From Octopus sinensis (lineage: Eukaryota), in assembly GCF_006345805.1 (NCBI RefSeq), contig NC_043012.1:39618001-39682000 (forward strand): a DNA stretch of 64,000 nucleotides. Direction: 5' to 3'. Shown piece by piece: positions 5,138 to 61,460 of the stretch. The notes beneath the pieces were generated by a model. The model searched no databases and was not told the DNA's origin. It saw only the letters and a list, made by a program, of their open reading frames with translations. A program made the position numbers and the translations under genes. Position 1 is the first letter of the stretch; each line of letters opens with the position of its first letter.

Positions 5138-5596
5138 AAGGTTGAATAAATAGCACAGAAAAATCTAGTTTACGAAGCATTGAAAAGTCAGTGCTTTCGA
5201 ATAAATATACATCGGTGAAATACATAATCACTCACATACACACACACAAACGTATGGCCATGTATGTGTGTGTACTCGACAGGCCTCCGCGTATTGCCCC
5301 TCTAACAGCTTCTGCTCCCAAGCCATTGGTCATTCCAGGATTTAGTGTCCAAAACCCTCAAAAGCCAGATGATCACGATATTGTATAGGTTAAAATTGGA
5401 TCCTCAGGGTTGTGAGGCGAACCTTTTAAGTTATTCCTGCATCCATTAAGTATCCATAAAGTCGACCAGAGTAGGAGTAATTTGCACATAAGAGTTTTCA
5501 TTTCTAAAAACACACTTTGTTTACATTTATTTTAATTTTAATTTAATATAAAAGCTACATTTATAAGTTCAAAAATTGTGAATTAATTTGTCAGTG

Positions 5597-5667
5597 GCCA
5601 GTTTAGCTTAAGGGTGAAGCACTTGGCTGTTAATCGCAGGATATGAGTTCGACTCTCGTGGCTGGCT
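5597..5667 (+). tRNA. tRNA-Asn(GTT)-like gene or pseudogene with non-canonical sequence
   Basis: Acceptor GCCAGTT/GGCTGGC, D stem GCTT/AAGC, anticodon loop CTGTTAA, T arm ATGAG-TTCGACT-CTCGT, A and B boxes, T5 at 5677-5681. Anticodon stem has two mismatches. Confidence 0.55.
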
Positions 5668-5901
5668 GCTGACAAATTTTTCCGCAAAATATGGATATAT
5701 TATCTTGTTCTTGCTGTTCTGTCAGCATATTATTCTGCGTTCGAGAATAAATTATCTCCTCATCTGTATCTTTCAATGCATCTCAGTGCTTCTAAAAGAA
5801 AACTTTGTTTACTTTTATCATAATTCGAAGAGTTTTATGTTTTATGTCGAGAACTGACTACGGATAGACGTAACACAATCTATGAATAGTGTCAGAAAAG
5901 A

Positions 5902-8724: not shown

Positions 8725-9120
8725 CTTTGCGTGTCATCTTGGGAAAGTGTTTTCTAGTAGAGCCTCGGGGCCGAGCATAGTCTTGTGAGTGGATTTTGTA
8801 GGCGGAAACTGAAAGAAGCCTGTCGTATATATATATATAGGTGTGTGTGTGTGTGTATAGTGGCTAGATAGATAGATAATGTGTGTGTGGGTATGTTTTT
8901 GTGTCCCTGTCTGGCATCACCACTTGACAACCGATGTTGGTCCGCGTAACCTCTGGTTTGACAAAAGGTAGCGGTAGAATAAGTACCAGGCTTTAAGAAG
9001 ATGAAATAAGAACAGTGATGTGGGTGGGGAGAGGGCGATTCGTTCGAACTGAAAATTCGTCATGGTAGTGTTCCAGCATGGCCGGACTATAATGACTAAA
9101 GCGAGTAAAAGATAAAGGTA
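8725..9120 (+). mobile_element. SINE family A, 5'-eroded
   Basis: gtgagtggattttgtaggcggaaactgaaagaagcctgtcgtata...cttgacaaccgatgttgg...ccagcatggcc. Confidence 0.7.
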
Positions 9121-28239: not shown

Positions 28240-29340
28240 ATGCAAACGTGCAAAAATCATCATCATCATCATCATCATCATCGTCGTCGTCGCTAGCGTC
28301 AACACTATTATGATCTCCATCATCATCACCGACAACAATGACAATGTTATCGCCTCAAACAGCATTAGCATTACCTATAACAACGGCACCGCCAACAACA
28401 CCGCCCACACGACCACCAGCTTCATCTGTACCAACTGCAGCATTACCAATATCAACGTCGACTGAACCACCACTTATACTAGCACCTATACTCGCACACT
28501 CGCAATGCCACCACCGTTTTTAACGCCAACCAACACGTTCGGTACTACCAACAAGACCACCATTGCATTATGGCACCAATCCTCACTACCGACACCCACC
28601 AAAACATTATTATCATCACCAACAGCACTGCTACCAATACTACCACCACCACTACTACCAACAGGTCTACTACTACTACTACTACCAACAGCAACATCAC
28701 TACCAAAACTTCCAACACCACTACCATCACCATTACCACTACCAACACTATTGTCACCACCACTACTACCAACATTACCACTACCAAAACCATAACCACC
28801 AACGCCATCACTACCAACGCCGCCACTACCACCACCATCACCACCACCGCTACCGCCACTACTACTACTACTACAAACACTACCACCACCAACACCCATA
28901 ACCACCAGCGCCTCCACTACTAACGCTGCCACTACTAACATCACTGCTACTAGCACCACCATGACCTACACCACCACCACCATCACTACTAGCACCACTA
29001 CCATCAACACTAACCACACCATCCTCCCCACCACCAACAGCAATACCATTACTATCACCAACCACTCCACCACCGCCACTAGTATCACCATCTGCATCAA
29101 CTACGCTACCTTCGACGAGACCGCCTTCTCTATCGCCATCACCAACACCACCCACCCCCAACGCCTCCTTAAAAGACCCTATAATTTATATCTCCACCAA
29201 ACTTGTGATGTCACTAAATGGATGTCATTCCTTCACTTATTTCCCACCAAATTAGTTCACTCCTATTAATGCTACTAACACCACTTCCATCATCACCTCT
29301 CCCACCTCTCGCACCACCACCGCTATCAAGTAAATACTCA
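28240..29340. repeat. Cryptic trinucleotide low-complexity tract (ACC/ACT/CAT/CAA)
   Basis: Poly-Thr, poly-His and poly-Pro ORFs in all three frames with frame switches. Confidence 0.85.
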
Positions 29341-29566: not shown

Positions 29567-30037
29567 TTCTTTTGCCTCTCGTCTACTGTCCTCAGGTCTT
29601 ATCCCTGTCATTCTAGGAGAATCTCTCATTCTCTCTCCCTCTTTTCTCTCTCTTATCTTCTCTATTGTCCTCAGGTCATGTTCCGTTAATTTAAGGTTGC
29701 TAAAAAAGTGCAGCTTGCTCTCACGTAGATCGGATTAAAATAATCTTAATATCTGAGTCACTGTAATGTTAGGCTTGGATCTGTAGCCCAAAGTGAACGC
29801 AATTTACTGCAAATAAACATAGACGGCCACTAACATAATTGCCATCATGAAATACTGTGTTGTCTTTCAAGTAGGAACGGTTCAGTTCGACGTTATTGTT
29901 TAACCAATTGTATTTTATGTATCGTGGCTCATTTTACCTGTTAACACGTTCTTGTCTGACTCTTTACGTTATAATACTTTCTTTAATATATTACTTCATA
30001 AAATGATCGGCTTTTAGCATATCTAACACATTTCCAG

Positions 30038-30087
30038 GTGCAACATTCCTCATAACAATAGTCTCATGTTCTCAAAGGTGTGATTAA
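30038..30087 (+). pseudogene. Candidate short exon (GATFLITIVSCSQRCD*), paralog copy 1
   Basis: tctaac...atttccAG acceptor. Homologous to 33775-33824 with the same acceptor and stop position. Confidence 0.3.
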
Positions 30088-30239
30088 GCTAATCGAATGG
30101 ACAGTGGCGCCATTGTGGTGCACGATTGTAGTCCAGTTTGTAGCAAGTATTTCAGCAAGGTCAAAGATCTTCCTTTTATTGAGATTCCCAAAGTATTTTG
30201 GCACTCCAACGCCATCTCGAACTAATTCACAAACTGACG

Positions 30240-30277
<38 letters not shown>

Positions 30278-30430
30278 TACACACAACACACATACACACA
30301 CACACATACACACACCACACACATACAAACGCACACGCACACACACACAAATGCACATACTGTAAAGACTACTTTATTTCTTTTTAGAATGTTGTTTTAA
30401 AATTTTGTTTTAAATAACACACAGAAACAT

Positions 30431-30597
30431 AGACAAGACGGGCTTCTTTCAGTTTCCCTCACTCAAATTCACTCAAAAGCCATTGGTCGGCCTACAACTA
30501 TAGTAAAAGCACTTGCTCAAGTCACCAGGAAACGACCCGGAACCGGAAGCGATGCAGTTGCGAAGCAAACGCCTTACAACGTGGTCATGGTTGCACT
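30431..30597 (-). mobile_element. SINE family A, 5' half
   Basis: gacgggcttctttcagtttcc...ttggtcggcc...ctatagtaaaagcacttgctcaag. Confidence 0.7.
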
Positions 30598-30825
30598 TAT
30601 CCGCTTCCTCGCCATCTTTTTCTTTTACATTTTTGTTTGTTATCTTTCCTCTTTCCTTGGTTCCAGACAATTCTATCCCAACTTTTTTTTCAATTAGCCA
30701 GGTTTTCTTTAGATGGTATGTGTCTTTAAAGACTTTGGGACGTCGGTGGTTGCCTTATTAAATAATATATCAATGTCTGAAACTAAACTACATGCATTTT
30801 AGGAATAATACTGTTAATTTGTTGT

Positions 30826-31579
30826 GTTGACGGTTTGTCACTGGGGGACAAATTCTCGATGCACAATACCCCGGATGTCGAAACAAACGATGAGCATCTC
30901 TTGATGGAATAGGAGCTCTGTCGTGCCTACCTCGGCCGTGCCCATAGATCAAACTCTCGTCACAGGTGACGAAGGATGTGTCGGCACATTGACGACGAAC
31001 TTAGGAAACTTAGACACGATGTTCTTTCTTTTCGGTAATCATCAGGTGGGGGAGAAACATTGCAAAGATACCCCACATATTCAATTCACACGTTGGGCTT
31101 GATTGCACCATCTCATACGACCGACCAACAACATAAGCAATGTCATTTGATTGACCGCTGATGATACACATGCATAAGCTGAGAAGTTTTCCTCCACATT
31201 TCCGTGGGTGACGCTCGTGGCAGCTCTTCCAAATTGCTCATTTCCTCCTAGTGACGGACTTTCGCTTTTTGAAGTGCCCGTGCCACTCGAAACCTTCCAT
31301 ACGGCCCATTGCCTCGTCGCCGTAAACCTGCCGAAGCCTGCTCAATGTCTCTCTAGAAGTCTTCCCAAGTTTAAGTTCAATAACAATATCCCCGACAACT
31401 GCATGTAAGTGATCACGAAAACACTCATTTGAAAACTTCCGAAGTAACCACAACGGCGATGTCAACGCCACGCTGCTTCATGAAAGTCAATGCTACCTCA
31501 CACTGCGTAAGCAACAGTGTCTGCAATCTCTTGACTCGCTACAGAACTAGTCCGGCAAAATGTTTGATACAGCCCCGTA
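30826..31579 (-). mobile_element. Mariner (DD34D) element, 5' half: TIR, HTH domain and first catalytic D
   Basis: KLGKTSRETLSRLRQVYGDEAMGRMEGFEWHGHFK, then VTCDESLIYG, then MLIVCFDIRGIVHREFVPQ*QTVN. TIR-like end aaaatgtttgatacagccccg|ta at 31579. Confidence 0.9.
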
Positions 31580-31587
31580 CACATACT

Positions 31588-31750
31588 CACGACAGGCTTC
31601 TTTCAGTTTCCATCAACCAGATTCTCTCAGCCATTTGTCGTTCACTGGCTATTGTAGAAGACACTTGCTCGAGCCACGAAACGGTGAGGCTGAACTTGCA
31701 GCGATGTGGTTGTAAAGCAAGCTCCTTACCACACAGCCAAGCCTGCACCT
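31588..31750 (-). mobile_element. SINE family A, 5' half
   Basis: acgacaggcttctttcagtttcc...agaagacacttgc...ttaccacacagccaagcctgcacct. Confidence 0.75.
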
Positions 31751-33196
31751 AGTTACCCCCATCCCCTAATTTTCTTGATATTGTTATTATTTCTCTTTTA
31801 TTAGTTCCAGGCAATTCTAACAGAAAGTTTTTCTAAAGAGTACGATTTTCTTTAGATAGCAACCGTTTTTGAAGGTTTCTGATCAACAATCACTGTATAT
31901 TTAAACAATCTATGGAAAAATATTTCAAGCAGCTGCCTGTAGTTTAGGATTGCTTAAGTGAATTTCTTATTACTCTTAATTTATTAAACGTTATCGTATA
32001 TATTTATATATACATACATGTACACATAAAATGAATGTCTATGTACCCACACGGTGATCATACACCATCTTTACAATAGAAATTGAGCATCAGCTAGACG
32101 TGTTGCGTGCATCGAATGGAACCCACGTGCAATTGTTCTGATATTTCTAATAAATCTTTATCTCTTTGCCTATGCTTTGCACTAAACTCTGCAAACATTG
32201 CGATATCACATCACCTAAACTTACATTGGAATAAACTGCGTTCTACGAATTGTTATGTTAAGGAGTCATTTCCCATTTGAATCAAATTTCTTGACGAGTT
32301 TAAACCTCTCATTCTTTTTTCACACGCAGATCCTCTCCAAATATGTATAACCGTATTAATACAAGTAGAAGTTTTTTATCCGTCCGCCACGTTGACGACA
32401 CATTCTTCTTTCCAGTGTCTCGTTTAGGATATTCAGTTTAACTGCTTTCATGACAGTGGCATTATTCTTGAAGGTTTCCCTTAGATACTTTATGACAGGA
32501 ACAGAAACAGCTTGGATAATCTGTTGGTTTTCCTTATTTTTGTCTGTCCATCACCTGCGGTCCAGTACAGCCTATGTAGATTTTGAGATATCAAAAATTG
32601 TTGTCGGTTATGATTTTATATATTGCGTTTTATTTTATATAACATAAAATTACAAATTCATACGTAAAATAATGCAAAAATCGTTGTAGAATCATAAAAG
32701 GTTAAAAAAGACGGCCGGTAAAAGTTAAAGGACGGCCTGTAACATAATTGGATATCATTAACATTCTTACCACTCAGCCAAGCCTGATCCTTACCTCCTC
32801 ACCCTATTTTTCTTGTTGTTGTTTTTTCTCTGTTATTAGTTCCAGACGATACTAATAGAAATGTTTGTAACGAGTAGGGCCTACTTTTGAATGCATTGTT
32901 CCTCGAACGTTTTTTCATCAGCAATCGTTGTATACTTAAATAATCTATGGAAAATAACGTAACTCCCAGCAGTGAAGCATTAATTAAGGTGTTATTAATC
33001 TTAGTTCATTACACATTGTAATATATATGTACATACATTCAAACATACAATTTGAGACCCCGAAGTGTTATGGCACCGCCACTCAATCTCGAAATAATTC
33101 ACAAAGTGACAGACCCCTACACGCACAAAGAGTAAATAGTTACCTTATTTCTTTCAAGGATATTCTTTTAATATTTTGTTTTAAATCACACATACA

Positions 33197-33637
33197 TACA
33201 AGGTCGTATCCAAAAGTTCTATGAGTAGTAATACTGAATAGAAAATAACTTATATAATTTTAACATCATCTCCTTTAAAATAGTCACCTCACGCAGTATT
33301 TCACAGGTCCTAGCGTTCCTGCTGCCTTTCGAATCCGGCCCTGAAGTCGTTTTACATAAGCAAGTGGAGAACTATCTGTGATTCACTATGGATGTCGACA
33401 ACTGTTAAAACGGTAACCTTTGAGCGGCCTTTTCGTCTTGGGGAACAAATGAAAATCTGTAGATGCTAAATGTAGCGAATAGGGTGTGTGCGAAAAACAC
33501 AGCATGCTTTGAGGGCGAACAAGACACTCACAGGCGAGGAAAGTTCGGTGACGGGGTGCATTGCCGTCGTGAAGAATTCAATTCTTTGCTCCCCACAAAT
33601 CCGGTCGCTTTCGACGAATGTTCTCCCTCAAACGCTT
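33197..33637 (-). mobile_element. Mariner element, 3' half: catalytic domain end and TIR
   Basis: KRLRENIRRKRPDLWGAKN*ILHDGNAPRH, PYSLHLASTDFHLFPK (degenerate YSPDLAP.D), GDYFKGD. TIR ta|caaggtcgtatccaaaagttc. Confidence 0.9.
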
Positions 33638-33774
33638 CCTTTAATCACTTTGTTTTCTGCATCCTCAATCATTTTAGTTCACACGTCCGTGTCGGCCCCT
33701 TTCCAATCTGTTACTATCTCTATTCTGTTCCTGATTAAAATCACAGGCTTTTACCATATCTGCCCCATTTATAG

Positions 33775-33824
33775 GTGCAGCATTTCTAATGACAGCAGCT
33801 TCTTATTCTCAATGGAGTGATTAA
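33775..33824 (+). pseudogene. Candidate short exon (GAAFLMTAASYSQWSD*), paralog copy 2
   Basis: ccatttatAG acceptor. Block 33640-34065 aligns with 29910-30420. Confidence 0.3.
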
Positions 33825-34065
33825 ACTAACCGGAACTGACAGTAACCCCCCCATTCCCCACTACGACGCCTCATTGCAGTTTACTTTACTGCAAGTATTC
33901 AATCAACGCCGCATATTGATTCTACCCAACAACATTTCAAGGTGCTGCTACTCAATCTCGAACTAACTCACAAAGTGTCACACACACAAACACACAAACT
34001 GAATAATGAGTTTCGTTAGTTCTTTCTAGAATATTGTTTTACAAATATGTTTTTATATTATTAGG

Positions 34066-34447
34066 CCCACTCATGGCTATGTCGAGAAATTATTTTCTAG
34101 CCACGAGATTTCACGATTTCACTCTGTGTCACTTTAGGCAAGTTTCTTCTGATGTCGCCCCACTCGACCAGTGCCTTGTGAGTGACTTTATTAGACGGAA
34201 ACTGTGTGGAACCTCTTCGTATGTATGTTCATGTTTGTCTATATTTGTTTTTGTTTCCCCACCCACAGCTTCACAATCAGTGTTTGTTAATCTCCGTAAC
34301 TTAGCGTTTCGACAAATAAAAATGACCGATAGAATGATACAAATTTATTTATAAGTACTAGGGTCGATTCAATGGACTAACACTTGAAGTGTGTTTGGTA
34401 GCATGGCCGCAGTCCAATGACTGAAACAAGTAAATGCAAAGGATAAA
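34066..34447 (+). mobile_element. SINE family A, old copy
   Basis: gccttgtgagtgactttattagacggaaactg...ccgtaacttagcg...gaccgatagaat...agcatggccgcagtccaatgactgaaacaagtaaa. Confidence 0.6.
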
Positions 34448-40443: not shown

Positions 40444-41367
40444 ATAATCGTTGAACCTGCCGGTGGGCCATGTTGTGTAAACCGAACTAACTTGATCAGG
40501 ACAAAACACGAACTTTCTGAAGTTCGAACACACAAACGCGCGCTAAAACATATAACACAAAACAGTCGTTGATAGGCTTACATGCGTGCATTTGTTTGTG
40601 TATGTGTATGTTTGCGTATGTTTGTGTGTGTTTGTGTGTGTCTATATTTATGTGTGTGTGTATGTATGCGTATATTTTTGTGTGTGTGTGAGAGAGAGAA
40701 AGAGAGAAAGAGAGAGAGAGAGAGTGTGTGTGAGTGTGTGTGTGTGTGCGTGTGTGTATGTGTGTGTGTGCGTGTGTGTGTGTGTGAGAGAGAGAGAGTA
40801 AGAATTGTTGATGAATCTAATACAGCAGCAAAATGCATGAAACAGTTGATCGATTTTAGTGTATTTACAGATTTTGGGATTTGTAAATAGGTATAGATGC
40901 AGAAGAGGAAGATGTTTTGATAGACACACAGTTTAATCTCAAGTTCAATATTGACTAACGGCAACTACATCATTTGAAATCAGTCAAGGGTTTCTCTGAA
41001 ACACATCCCACATAGCTAGTAACTATTGCAGGTTAATGAACGCCGCTCAACAAACTCCCTCTACCTGTTTGATATTATACGAAGCCCAGTTCCCCTCAAA
41101 TATATCCCATCGACTTAGAAATGTGACGACATGTTGAACTACAGATAATTCAAATGGCAAGGATGTTTACAGTTTTTATGCTATTTCTTATATATTTCAT
41201 ACATTAGTACTGGCCTAGGGTTAAACACAAGCCATAAGAACTAGGAGAGAACCAAGAACAAAATACACCAACCACAACTACAACAACCACAGCAACAGCA
41301 AACACATGATCCGAAACGAAGAGCACAGATCCTCTGTACAATATTTAAGTTTTAGTCTCTGGTTTAT

Positions 41368-41710
41368 AGGCGCAGGCGTGGCTGTGTGGTAAGTAGCTTG
41401 CTCATCAACCACATGGTCCCAGGTTCAGTCCCACTGCGTGGCATCTTGGGCAAGTATCTTCTACTATAGCCTCAGGCCGACCAAAGCCTTGTGAATGGAT
41501 TTGGTAGACGGAAGCTAAAAGAAGCCCGTCGTATATGTGTGTGTGTTTGTCTCCCCAACATCACTTGACCACCGATGTTGGTGTGTTTACGTCCTCGTAA
41601 CCTAGCGGTTCGGCCTAAGTACGATAGAATAAGAACTAGGCTTACAAAGAATAAGTCCTGGGGTCGATTTGTTCGACTAAAGGCGGTGCTCCAGCATGGC
41701 CGCAGTCAAA
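41368..41710 (+). mobile_element. SINE family A, full length (reference copy)
   Basis: tRNA head aggcgcaggcgtggctgtgtggtaag...ggttcagtcccactg, internal (TG)n, tail ggcggtgctccagcatggccgcagtcaaa. Confidence 0.9.
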
Positions 41711-42702: not shown

Positions 42703-43145
42703 TCTTTTATTTATTTCAGTCATGTGACAGTTGCCATGCTGGAGCACCGCCTTTGGTCCAGCAAATCGACCCCAGGACTTATTCTTTGTAAGGCTAGTAC
42801 TTATTCTATCGGTCTCTTTTGCCGAACCGCTAAGTTATGGGGACGTAAACACACCAGCATCGGTTGTCAAGCGATTTTGTGGGGAGGAGAAACACAGACA
42901 CACAAACATATATACACACATACACACACACACACACACACTTATATATATATATATATATATACATATATATACACTCATACGACGGGCTTCTTTCAGT
43001 TTCTGTCTTCCAAATCCACTAACAAGGCCTTGGTCAGCCCGAGGCTATAGTAGAATACATTTGCCCAAGGTGCCACGCAGTGAGACTGAACCCGGAACCA
43101 TGTGGTTCGTTAGCAAGCGACTTACCACACTGCCACTCCTACGCA
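42703..43145 (-). mobile_element. SINE family A, full length
   Basis: Reverse complement of 41368-41710 with a longer internal microsatellite. Confidence 0.9.
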
Positions 43146-61105: not shown

Positions 61106-61460
61106 CTCTTTTACTTGCTTCAGTCATTTGAATGTGGCCATGCTGGAGCACCACCTTTAGTCGAACAAATCGACCCCTGGACTTATTCTTTGTAAGCCTA
61201 GTTCTTACTCTATCGGTCTGTCTTGCCGAACCGCTAAGTTATGGGAACGTAAATACACCAACATCGGTTGTCAAACGATGGTGGGGGCAAAAACACTGAC
61301 ACACAAATACATATATATATATTTATACACACAACGGGATTCTTTCAGTTTCCGTCTACCGAATCCACTCACAAGCCTTTGGTCGGCCCAAGGCTAGAGT
61401 GGGAGACACTTGCCAAAGGTGTTACGCAGTGGGATTGAACCCATATGGTGGCTCCACTCC
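61106..61460 (-). mobile_element. SINE family A, near full length
   Basis: atgctggagcaccacctttagtcgaacaaatcgacc...gccgaaccgctaagtta...gaatccactcacaagcctttggtcggccc. Confidence 0.9.

What the first reader, a model, noticed from the sequence alone, without database searches (positions are those of the whole stretch)
30826..33637. One mariner split into complementary halves in circularly permuted order: possible re-integrated circular DNA
Seen: the 5' half (30826-31579) stops at ...EFVPQ*QTVN and the 3' half (33197-33637) starts at KRLRENIRRKRP. They do not overlap, and only about 8 codons are missing relative to typical mariner transposases. Both are on the minus strand, but the 3' half lies upstream of the 5' half. 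Joining the two TA-bounded flanks (taaatcacacataca-TA-cacatactcacgacaggcttc) rebuilds a site matching the empty paralogous site at 30411-30443. Inference: a segment containing the intact element was circularised by recombination between local repeats and re-inserted after opening inside the transposase gene.
Basis: partly seen in the sequence, partly recalled or inferred. Interest (0 to 1): 0.75.

Follow-up and report, generated by a model that had tools for sequence, protein, structure and literature searches.

The report
Old mariner transposon with swapped halves
A long-dead mariner transposon lies in two exactly complementary halves in swapped order, marking an old local break-and-rejoin rearrangement (possibly through a DNA circle) in repeat-rich non-coding DNA; it is tidy but not a new kind of event.

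Summary
On the minus strand, a mariner 5' half (30826-31577) ends at ...EFVPQ*QTVN. A 3' half (33199-33637) starts at KRLRENIRRKRPDLW. Against intact relatives exactly 8 codons are missing, with no overlap. The 3' half lies upstream of the 5' half. Each terminus keeps a TA, and the two outer flanks joined align colinearly (75%, 201 bp) with an unoccupied local paralogue (about 30339-30535). No other mariner copy is in the window.

The best reading is one old insertion whose host segment was later broken at three or four points and rejoined, so two adjacent blocks (874 and 1,940 bp) changed places without inversion. A 2.8-kb circle cut and re-inserted gives the same product as direct rejoining of two linear fragments. 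This sequence cannot separate the two.

Rivals remain: two duplicated copies truncated independently (needs a 2-4% coincidence), template switching, and misassembly. The element is about as decayed as the local duplications, so event order is uncertain. No reads or orthologous loci could be reached.

It is another example of a known kind, of modest interest.

The parts
30826..31577 (-). Mariner 5' half. It runs from the 5' terminal inverted repeat (element base 1 = 31577), through about 160 bp of leader, the HTH domain and the first part of the catalytic domain, to ...EFVPQ*QTVN (the N codon is 30826-30828). It is decayed: 4 in-frame stops, a frameshift, and about 53 bp missing near 30898-30937.
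   Evidence: (HTH_48 E=3e-4)
31578..31579 (.). TA next to the 5' terminus (target-site duplicate).
33197..33198 (.). TA next to the 3' terminus (target-site duplicate).
33199..33637 (-). Mariner 3' half. It runs from KRLRENIRRKRPDLW (the K codon is 33635-33637), through HD(G)NAP and TDFHLF, to GDYFKGD, then about 57 bp of trailer including the 3' terminal repeat. It has 5 in-frame stops and one frameshift near 33406.
29899..30825 (+). Block alpha, an unoccupied paralogue. It holds A (29899-30258), a (CA)n run, B (30339-30429), C (minus-strand SINE-like repeat, about 30416-30600 plus its flank) and D* (to 30825). The empty target site is near 30423-30429. The block ends at junction J1.
31580..32032 (+). 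Block beta: C and D, the right half of the occupied target site. It is 61-68% identical to alpha.
32033..32765 (+). Spacer X, unique in the window. Its last 35 bp (32731-32761) resemble 29822-29851, which lies 47 bp upstream of A in alpha. The spacer ends at junction J3 (32765/32766).
32766..33196 (+). Block gamma. It holds a 286-bp copy of the tail of C plus D (32766-33051, 75% identical to beta, sister to it). Then, after junction J4 (about 33051), come the end of A and B (33052-33196), which form the left half of the occupied target site.
33640..34053 (+). Block delta: A and B, 66% identical to alpha. It starts at junction J2 (33637-33639/33640) and is followed by a plus-strand copy of the SINE-like repeat.

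Best explanation
One mariner element inserted long ago at a TA in the CA/TA-rich tail of a SINE-like repeat. That repeat sat inside a small cluster of old local duplications (blocks A, B, C, D).

The element then decayed. At some point one break-and-rejoin event cut the DNA inside the transposase gene, between codons about 220 and 229, and at two or three nearby host positions. Two neighbouring blocks were rejoined in exchanged order without inversion:
- the left target flank plus the 3' half (now 32766-33639, 874 bp);
- the 5' half plus the right target flank plus spacer X (now 30826-32765, 1,940 bp).

About 24 bp of the element was lost at its break, and probably a few tens to a few hundred bp of host DNA at the others.

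This is topologically the same as excising the 2.8-kb segment, closing it into a circle at 32765/32766, opening it inside the mariner and ligating it back into the gap. Whether the intermediate was a circle or two linear fragments is not decidable here.

Shown: the anatomy, the complementarity, the shared target site, and the non-homologous junctions. Inferred: a single event, its order in time, and the nature of the intermediate. The structure has no present function; it is a scar.
For: The halves are complementary to within 8 codons, with no overlap. They share strand and family. Their ends resemble each other as terminal inverted repeats, CRRGGYYGTATC(C)AAA..., and each has a TA. The joined outer flanks are colinear with an empty paralogue. 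There is no other mariner DNA in the window.

One break inside the element accounts for both junctions J1 and J2 at once. The end of spacer X resembles the sequence that precedes block A in the alpha copy: 25/31, reached by 3 of 500 shuffles in a 150 x 150 bp comparison. That is expected if X once abutted block A of delta, that is, if the 874-bp block now lies inside a formerly continuous stretch.

The junctions carry no long homology and no target-site-like duplication, as expected of end joining. Order reversal A-B to B-A with orientation kept is a published signature of such events (PMC7450558).
Against: The inferred ancestral neighbour of alpha's D* (the C-tail of gamma) is not a natural continuation. 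Those two copies are also not each other's closest relatives: beta=gamma≠alpha at 54 sites, against 22-23 for the other pairings. An extra lost fragment or an earlier event must therefore be assumed.

The X-end match is short and was found after the fact.

Nine in-frame stops in about 340 codons imply roughly 12-35% substitutions since activity. That is similar to the divergence of the local blocks (pairwise identity 61-75%). The element may therefore predate some duplications, which opens the two-copy rival.

No independent assembly, read or orthologue was available.
Confidence: 0.55

Rival explanations
1. Two paralogous copies of the same insertion. In this reading the repeat unit carrying the mariner was duplicated in tandem, for instance by unequal crossing-over in the local array, giving ...B-M-C...B-M-C.... 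Two later, independent deletions then removed the 3' part of the left copy with its upstream flank, and the 5' part of the right copy with its downstream flank. The 1.6 kb between the halves would then be host DNA in its natural order.
For: The locus is a cluster of old duplications with several odd junctions. The element is as decayed as those duplications are diverged, so it could have been copied with them. In the present order the host blocks C-D ... A'-B can be read as one period of a tandem array. Tandem duplication and deletion are common events.
Against: Two independent deletion endpoints must fall within 24 bp of each other in a roughly 1.29-kb element without overlapping, about a 2-4% coincidence. 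At least three events are needed beyond the insertion. No remnant of a second copy exists: no overlap, and no further mariner DNA in 64 kb. The resemblance of the X end to the sequence upstream of block A would be a second coincidence.
Confidence: 0.17
2. Replication-based template switching (FoSTeS/MMBIR type). A stalled fork copied the blocks in a new order through serial jumps within a few kb, producing the permuted arrangement in one replicative event.
For: Four unusual junctions lie within 3 kb: 30825/6, 32765/6, about 33051 and 33637/40. A 286-bp block is duplicated next to the spacer (gamma versus beta). There may be an imperfect ACG(C)TT microhomology at 33632-33637 against 29890-29895.
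Against: The mariner material is conserved almost exactly, with each base present once and only 24 bp lost. A copying mechanism would have to leave and re-enter the element at the same point by chance, whereas break-and-rejoin gives this for free. The duplicated 286-bp block is 25% diverged from its sister, but nothing can date it against the permutation junctions, so it need not be part of the same event.
Confidence: 0.1
3. Assembly artefact. Under this view the true genome carries a colinear element, and the assembler mis-ordered two blocks in a repeat-rich stretch.
For: The region is rich in microsatellites and SINE-like repeats. No reads could be inspected.
Against: The local paralogues are only 61-78% identical, far too diverged to confuse an assembler. 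The mis-join would have to fall twice inside unique mariner sequence, lose 24 bp, and create a third junction in unique DNA.
Confidence: 0.06

Closest known systems
Segmental rearrangements attributed to circular DNA intermediates (A-B/C-D to B-A/D-C order reversal; Chicote et al. 2020, PMC7450558). The cattle colour-sidedness KIT translocations (Durkin et al. 2012) are cited from my own knowledge; the alleles are described in PMC12235870.
   Same: A segment is present in circularly permuted order with orientation kept. The breakpoints show only microhomology or none. The circle is inferred from order alone.
   Different: The scale is 2.8 kb rather than tens to hundreds of kb. The segment appears to have been put back at or next to its own locus and is not duplicated elsewhere in the window. 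The event is very old (junction flanks 25-39% diverged from their paralogues). A split transposon, rather than a donor copy, provides the evidence for the original order.
Mariner-like elements of the Tc1/mariner superfamily (Mos1, Hsmar1/SETMAR transposase domain).
   Same: TA target duplication, short terminal inverted repeats, an HTH_48 N-terminal domain, and a DD(34)D-type catalytic domain with the motifs HD.NAP and DFxLF. The reconstructed length is about 1.27 kb.
   Different: It is a dead copy: 9 in-frame stops, at least 2 frameshifts, about 53 bp of internal loss, and a probable D-to-G change in HDDNAP. It is split and permuted. It is only about 31-50% identical at protein level to the nearest database relatives, so the family consensus is unknown.
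Small germline complex rearrangements by multiple double-strand breaks and end joining (chromoplexy- or chromothripsis-like 'shuffling', local insertional translocation).
   Same: Three to four clustered breakpoints, copy-neutral exchange of fragments, small losses at the joints, and no homology at the junctions.
   Different: Only two fragments are involved and both keep their orientation. That is 1 of 7 non-original outcomes under random rejoining, which slightly favours a circular intermediate or a constrained repair.
Nested insertion, in which a transposon is split by a later insertion.
   Same: There are two non-overlapping fragments of one element on the same strand, with foreign DNA between them.
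   Different: In a nested insertion the 5' fragment precedes the 3' fragment and the internal break ends face each other. Here the order is reversed, and it is the terminal repeats, each with its target-site half, that face the intervening DNA.

Membership tests
Tc1/mariner (mariner-like element) | TA target-site duplication at both termini | tested here: met
   TA at 31578-31579 and at 33197-33198, directly outside the two termini.
Tc1/mariner (mariner-like element) | Short terminal inverted repeats | tested here: met
   The first ~25 nt of the 5' end and the reverse complement of the 3' end align as CGGGGCTGTAT-CAAACATT / CAAGGTCGTATCCAAAAGTT, about two thirds identical. They are decayed but recognisable.
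Tc1/mariner (mariner-like element) | Transposase with an HTH_48-type DNA-binding domain and a Mos1-like DDE/D catalytic domain | tested here: met
   Pfam HTH_48 E=3e-4 (21.2 bits, just under the 24.1 cut-off) and a weak Transposase_1 match. Mos1 and SETMAR structures match at E=3.5e-9 to 2e-8. P0001, which carries PF17906 and PF01359, matches at E=1.6e-30.
Tc1/mariner (mariner-like element) | Intact D,D(34)D catalytic triad | tested here: inconclusive
   The motifs LHDGNAP and TDFHLF are present in the 3' half. By eye the second D of HDDNAP reads G and the spacing is 35. The first D region is in the degraded 5' half. The copy is dead in any case.
Rearrangement through a circular DNA intermediate (eccDNA re-integration) | Segment present in circularly permuted order with orientation preserved | tested here: met
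   The 3' half lies upstream of the 5' half on the same strand, and the two target-site halves face inward.
Rearrangement through a circular DNA intermediate (eccDNA re-integration) | A novel joint between the two original ends of the segment (circle junction) | tested here: met
   32765/32766 joins spacer X to the middle of the SINE-like repeat, which lacks its head there. The same joint is also expected from direct exchange of linear fragments.
   No homology between the sequences joined at 32765/32766, nor between the host flanks of 30825 and 33640.
Rearrangement through a circular DNA intermediate (eccDNA re-integration) | Direct evidence of the circle, or of an ancestral colinear allele | not testable with these tools
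   No reads, population data or orthologous loci. Look-ups of junction-spanning ORFs found nothing.
Tandem duplication followed by independent truncations | Remnants of two copies: overlap between fragments, or further element DNA nearby | tested here: not met
   No overlap (8 codons missing). No other mariner DNA or protein similarity in the 64-kb window.
Nested transposon insertion | Colinear order of the two fragments, with internal break ends facing the insert | tested here: not met
   The order is reversed, and the terminal repeats face the intervening DNA.
Transposase-mediated alternative transposition (sister-chromatid or reversed-ends) | New junctions formed at the element's termini | tested here: not met
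   Both termini keep the two halves of one target site. The new junctions lie inside the transposase gene, at no TIR-like sequence.

The most novel reading that the evidence does not exclude
The scar records a germline excision of a 2.8-kb extrachromosomal DNA circle and its re-integration, in what appears to be a cephalopod genome (species not verified). The split transposon acts as a built-in barcode for the original order. If so, 'complementary transposon halves in permuted order with a shared target site' could be used as a genome-wide, assembly-only signature. It would let one count ancient eccDNA re-integrations and compare their rate with simple deletions and duplications.
Probability: 0.3. 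Interest if true: 0.5.

Novelty: new member of a known kind. Interest (0 to 1): 0.3.

Why it matters
A transposon inserted once has a known internal order and a known target site, so a permuted copy proves that the surrounding DNA was rearranged and fixes the breakpoints to a few bases. That makes this a clean small-scale example of copy-neutral block exchange, or circle re-integration, in a germline. Such events are hard to recognise in anonymous non-coding DNA. On its own it changes nothing about how such events are thought to occur. It lies in decayed, repeat-rich, apparently non-coding sequence and has no evident functional consequence. Its value would come from a systematic count of such signatures.

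Tried and rejected
(1) Independent copies of the locus. The look-up of encoding contigs with the 110-aa ORF across 33637 and the 107-aa ORF across the 5' terminus found nothing on record. A protein search with seven junction-spanning ORFs concatenated scored no hit. The species therefore seems absent from the protein and contig collections.

It was run with P0001 instead, which gave 150 mariner transposases used as rulers.

(3) Same subfamily test. The rank correlation of reference scores for the two halves was uninformative (Spearman 0.10, p=0.26). The segments are short and all references are about equally distant. P0001 and P0069 are in the top ten for both halves.

(4) Could the 5' half extend 24 bp further (TTN*QYYS, suggested by gapped tblastn)? 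Rejected. Those bases match the paralogous host blocks beta and gamma, and the extension needs a 3-codon insertion.

(5) Homology of spacer X, or of the region upstream of alpha, to any other block: none, except the 31-bp match at the X end.

(6) Target-site-duplication-like similarity between the host flanks of the two mariner breakpoints: at chance level.

(7) Dating the insertion against the duplications from stop-codon density: too imprecise, 12-35%.

(8) Rfam, tRNA and long-ORF scans of the window: nothing bearing on the finding.

(9) Rejected on anatomy: nested insertion, alternative transposition and autointegration.

Full report
**1. What is in the sequence**

The stretch 29.5-34.5 kb was read and translated. 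On the minus strand, 31577 down to 30826 encodes a badly decayed mariner transposase N-terminal and central part. The HTH region is ...IELKLGKTSRETLSRLRQVYGDEAMGRMEGFEWHGHFKK... (Pfam HTH_48, E=3e-4). After a frameshift it continues ...MLIVCFDIRGIVHREFVPQ*QTVN. On the same strand, 33637 down to 33199 reads KRLRENIRRKRPDLWGAKN*ILHDGNAPRHR...TDFHLFPKTKRPLKGYRF. After a one-base frameshift near 33406 it continues ...GDYFKGD, then about 57 bp of trailer.

The stitched translation matches Mos1 and SETMAR transposase structures (E=3.5e-9 to 2e-8). It also matches a 312-aa mariner transposase, P0001 (E=1.6e-30). There is no other mariner DNA or protein similarity in the 64-kb window.

**2. Complementarity**

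P0001 reads ...EFVPQGQTVN KDFYLTVL RRLRENIRRKRPDLW.... P0011, P0007 and P0069 read TVN KEYYLQVM RNLRE. Mos1 reads TVN AARYQQQL INLNRALQRKRP. The window's 5' half stops at the N and its 3' half starts at the K/R, so eight codons (24 bp) are missing. Five of the seven references whose alignments end exactly at both breaks give a gap of 8.

A gapped tblastn alignment suggested that the 5' half might run on as TTN*QYY. This is rejected. Those 24 bases align with the paralogous host blocks at the background level, and the last seven bases before 30826 match both paralogues best.

The reconstructed element is about 752 + 24 + 439 bp, plus about 53 bp lost internally near 30898-30937. That totals about 1.27 kb, a normal mariner size.

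**3. Termini and target site**

Both termini are followed by TA, and the two ends resemble each other as inverted repeats. Ninety bases left of the 3' terminus, joined to TA and to 120 bases right of the 5' terminus, align colinearly across the join with 30339-30535. Identity is 150/201 and the score is 92, against 11 +/- 2 for shuffles.

The right part of that site is a dispersed, roughly 180-bp SINE-like repeat in minus orientation. Other copies lie at 41367-41552, 42982-43135, 61325-61413, 8769-8832 and 34120-34240. The left part (block B) is local and not part of that repeat. The empty site is therefore a true local paralogue, not just a repeat consensus. The insertion was into the CA/TA-rich tail of the repeat.

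**4. Local architecture**

Self-comparison shows old paralogous blocks:
- alpha, 29899-30825: A, (CA)n, B, C, D*.
- beta, 31580-32032: C, D.
- X, 32033-32765: unique spacer.
- gamma, 32766-33196: tail of C, D, end of A, B.
- delta, 33640-34053: A, B.

Identities are 61-78%. For the C-tail/D part, beta and gamma are sisters (75%) and alpha is the outgroup (61%). Beta=gamma≠alpha holds at 54 sites, against 22-23 for the other two patterns. For the A'/B part the three copies are about equally distant (66-71%).

Reading left to right, the order is: alpha | mariner 5' half | beta, X | gamma | mariner 3' half | delta.

There are four unusual junctions:
- J1, 30825/30826: D* joined to mid-mariner.
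- J3, 32765/32766: X joined to mid-SINE.
- J4, about 33051: D joined to the end of A.
- J2, 33637-33639/33640: mid-mariner joined to the start of A.

**5. What happened**

A single break inside the element explains both J1 and J2. Undoing the permutation gives gamma(B)-TA-mariner-TA-beta(C). This is exactly the arrangement that the empty alpha copy predicts.

The minimal change from that ancestor is an exchange of two adjacent blocks without inversion:
- [gamma + 3' half], 874 bp;
- [5' half + beta + X], 1,940 bp.

This is equivalent to excision of the 2,812-bp segment, closure at J3, re-opening in the mariner, and re-ligation.

One observation favours an in-place exchange. The last 31 bp of X resemble the sequence lying 47 bp upstream of block A in alpha: 25/31, reached by 3 of 500 shuffles in a 150 x 150 bp comparison but 26 of 500 at 300 x 300. 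This is what one expects if X originally ran on into delta's block A. That evidence is short and post hoc.

The junctions show no homology between partners and no target-site-like duplication. At most there is an imperfect ACG(C)TT microhomology at J2. This points to end joining, not to recombination between repeats.

**6. Loose ends**

In the inferred ancestor, alpha's D* would abut gamma's C-tail. That is not a natural continuation, and those two copies are not sisters. So a further fragment must have been lost (a fourth break), or an earlier event preceded the exchange.

The element carries 9 in-frame stops and at least 2 frameshifts in about 340 codons. In a simple simulation this corresponds to roughly 12-35% substitutions. 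That is the same order as the divergence of the local blocks. The insertion may therefore predate some of the duplications.

This keeps a rival alive. The mariner-bearing unit may have been duplicated in tandem, and two independent deletions may have left complementary halves. That history needs two deletion endpoints within 24 bp of each other in 1.29 kb without overlap, about 2-4%. It also needs three extra events and leaves no remnant. I rate it well below the single-event reading, but not negligible.

Template switching is disfavoured because the mariner material is conserved almost exactly once. Misassembly is disfavoured because the paralogues are far too diverged to confuse an assembler, and because the joins fall in unique sequence.

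**7. Comparison with what is known**

Order reversal with preserved orientation and microhomology-only junctions has been used to infer circular DNA intermediates in human segmental duplications (PMC7450558). From my own knowledge, the same signature was used for the serial KIT translocations of colour-sided cattle (Durkin et al. 2012; the alleles are described in PMC12235870). Re-integration of eccDNA is widely discussed in reviews.

The present case is a small, old, local and apparently copy-neutral example. Its one attractive feature is that a transposon supplies the proof of the original order. It is not a nested insertion, because the order is wrong. It is not a product of alternative transposition or autointegration, because the termini keep their original flanks and the new joints lie inside the gene.

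**8. Limits**

No reads, no second assembly and no orthologous locus could be reached. Exact-ORF look-ups and a similarity search with junction-spanning ORFs returned nothing. The other collections hold no animal genomes. The species was not verified; the repeat content looks cephalopod-like, from memory only. The family consensus of this mariner is unknown, so the two halves could not be dated separately. Their stop densities, 4 in about 215 codons and 5 in about 127, do not differ significantly.

**9. Verdict**

It is another example of a known kind of rearrangement, with modest interest.

Noticed in passing
window 34075-34255 (+), next to block B of delta (ends about 34068): At the position where the alpha copy has the SINE-like repeat in minus orientation directly after block B, the delta copy has a copy of the same repeat family in plus orientation (inverted-repeat pairs I1, I2, I4; BLAST 30417-30489 vs 34238-34165). 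This is either an independent insertion at a paralogous site or an in-place inversion.
   Followed up: partly
window 32766-33051 vs 31725-32032: A discrete 286-bp copy of the repeat tail plus block D is bounded on both sides by junctions (J3 and J4). It is clearly closer to the beta copy (75%) than to alpha (61%). This later local duplication lies 1,035 bp from its sister, and its origin is unexplained.
   Followed up: partly
window 5596-5669 (+): A tRNA-like sequence (Rfam tRNA, 36 bits; ARAGORN reports an irregular 4-base anticodon 'gtta'). It is probably a tRNA pseudogene or the head of a tRNA-derived SINE.
   Followed up: no
window 28617-29036: A CCA/ACC-rich minisatellite with nested periods of 15, 21, 27, 45 and 111 bp. 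On the minus strand it gives a 158-aa Gly/Ser/Val-rich ORF (28486-28962), which is most likely not a gene.
   Followed up: no
window 13.8-18.1 kb, 45.8-46.2 kb, 62.4-63.3 kb: Long (TA)n/(TATG)n-type microsatellite tracts give spurious ORFs of 130-220 aa made of Y/I/C repeats. The whole 64-kb window shows no convincing protein-coding gene.
   Followed up: no
window 30898-30937 (minus strand, inside the mariner 5' half): About 53 bp of the transposase gene are missing between reference residues about 164 and 196, with a frameshift. This is an internal deletion separate from the split.
   Followed up: partly
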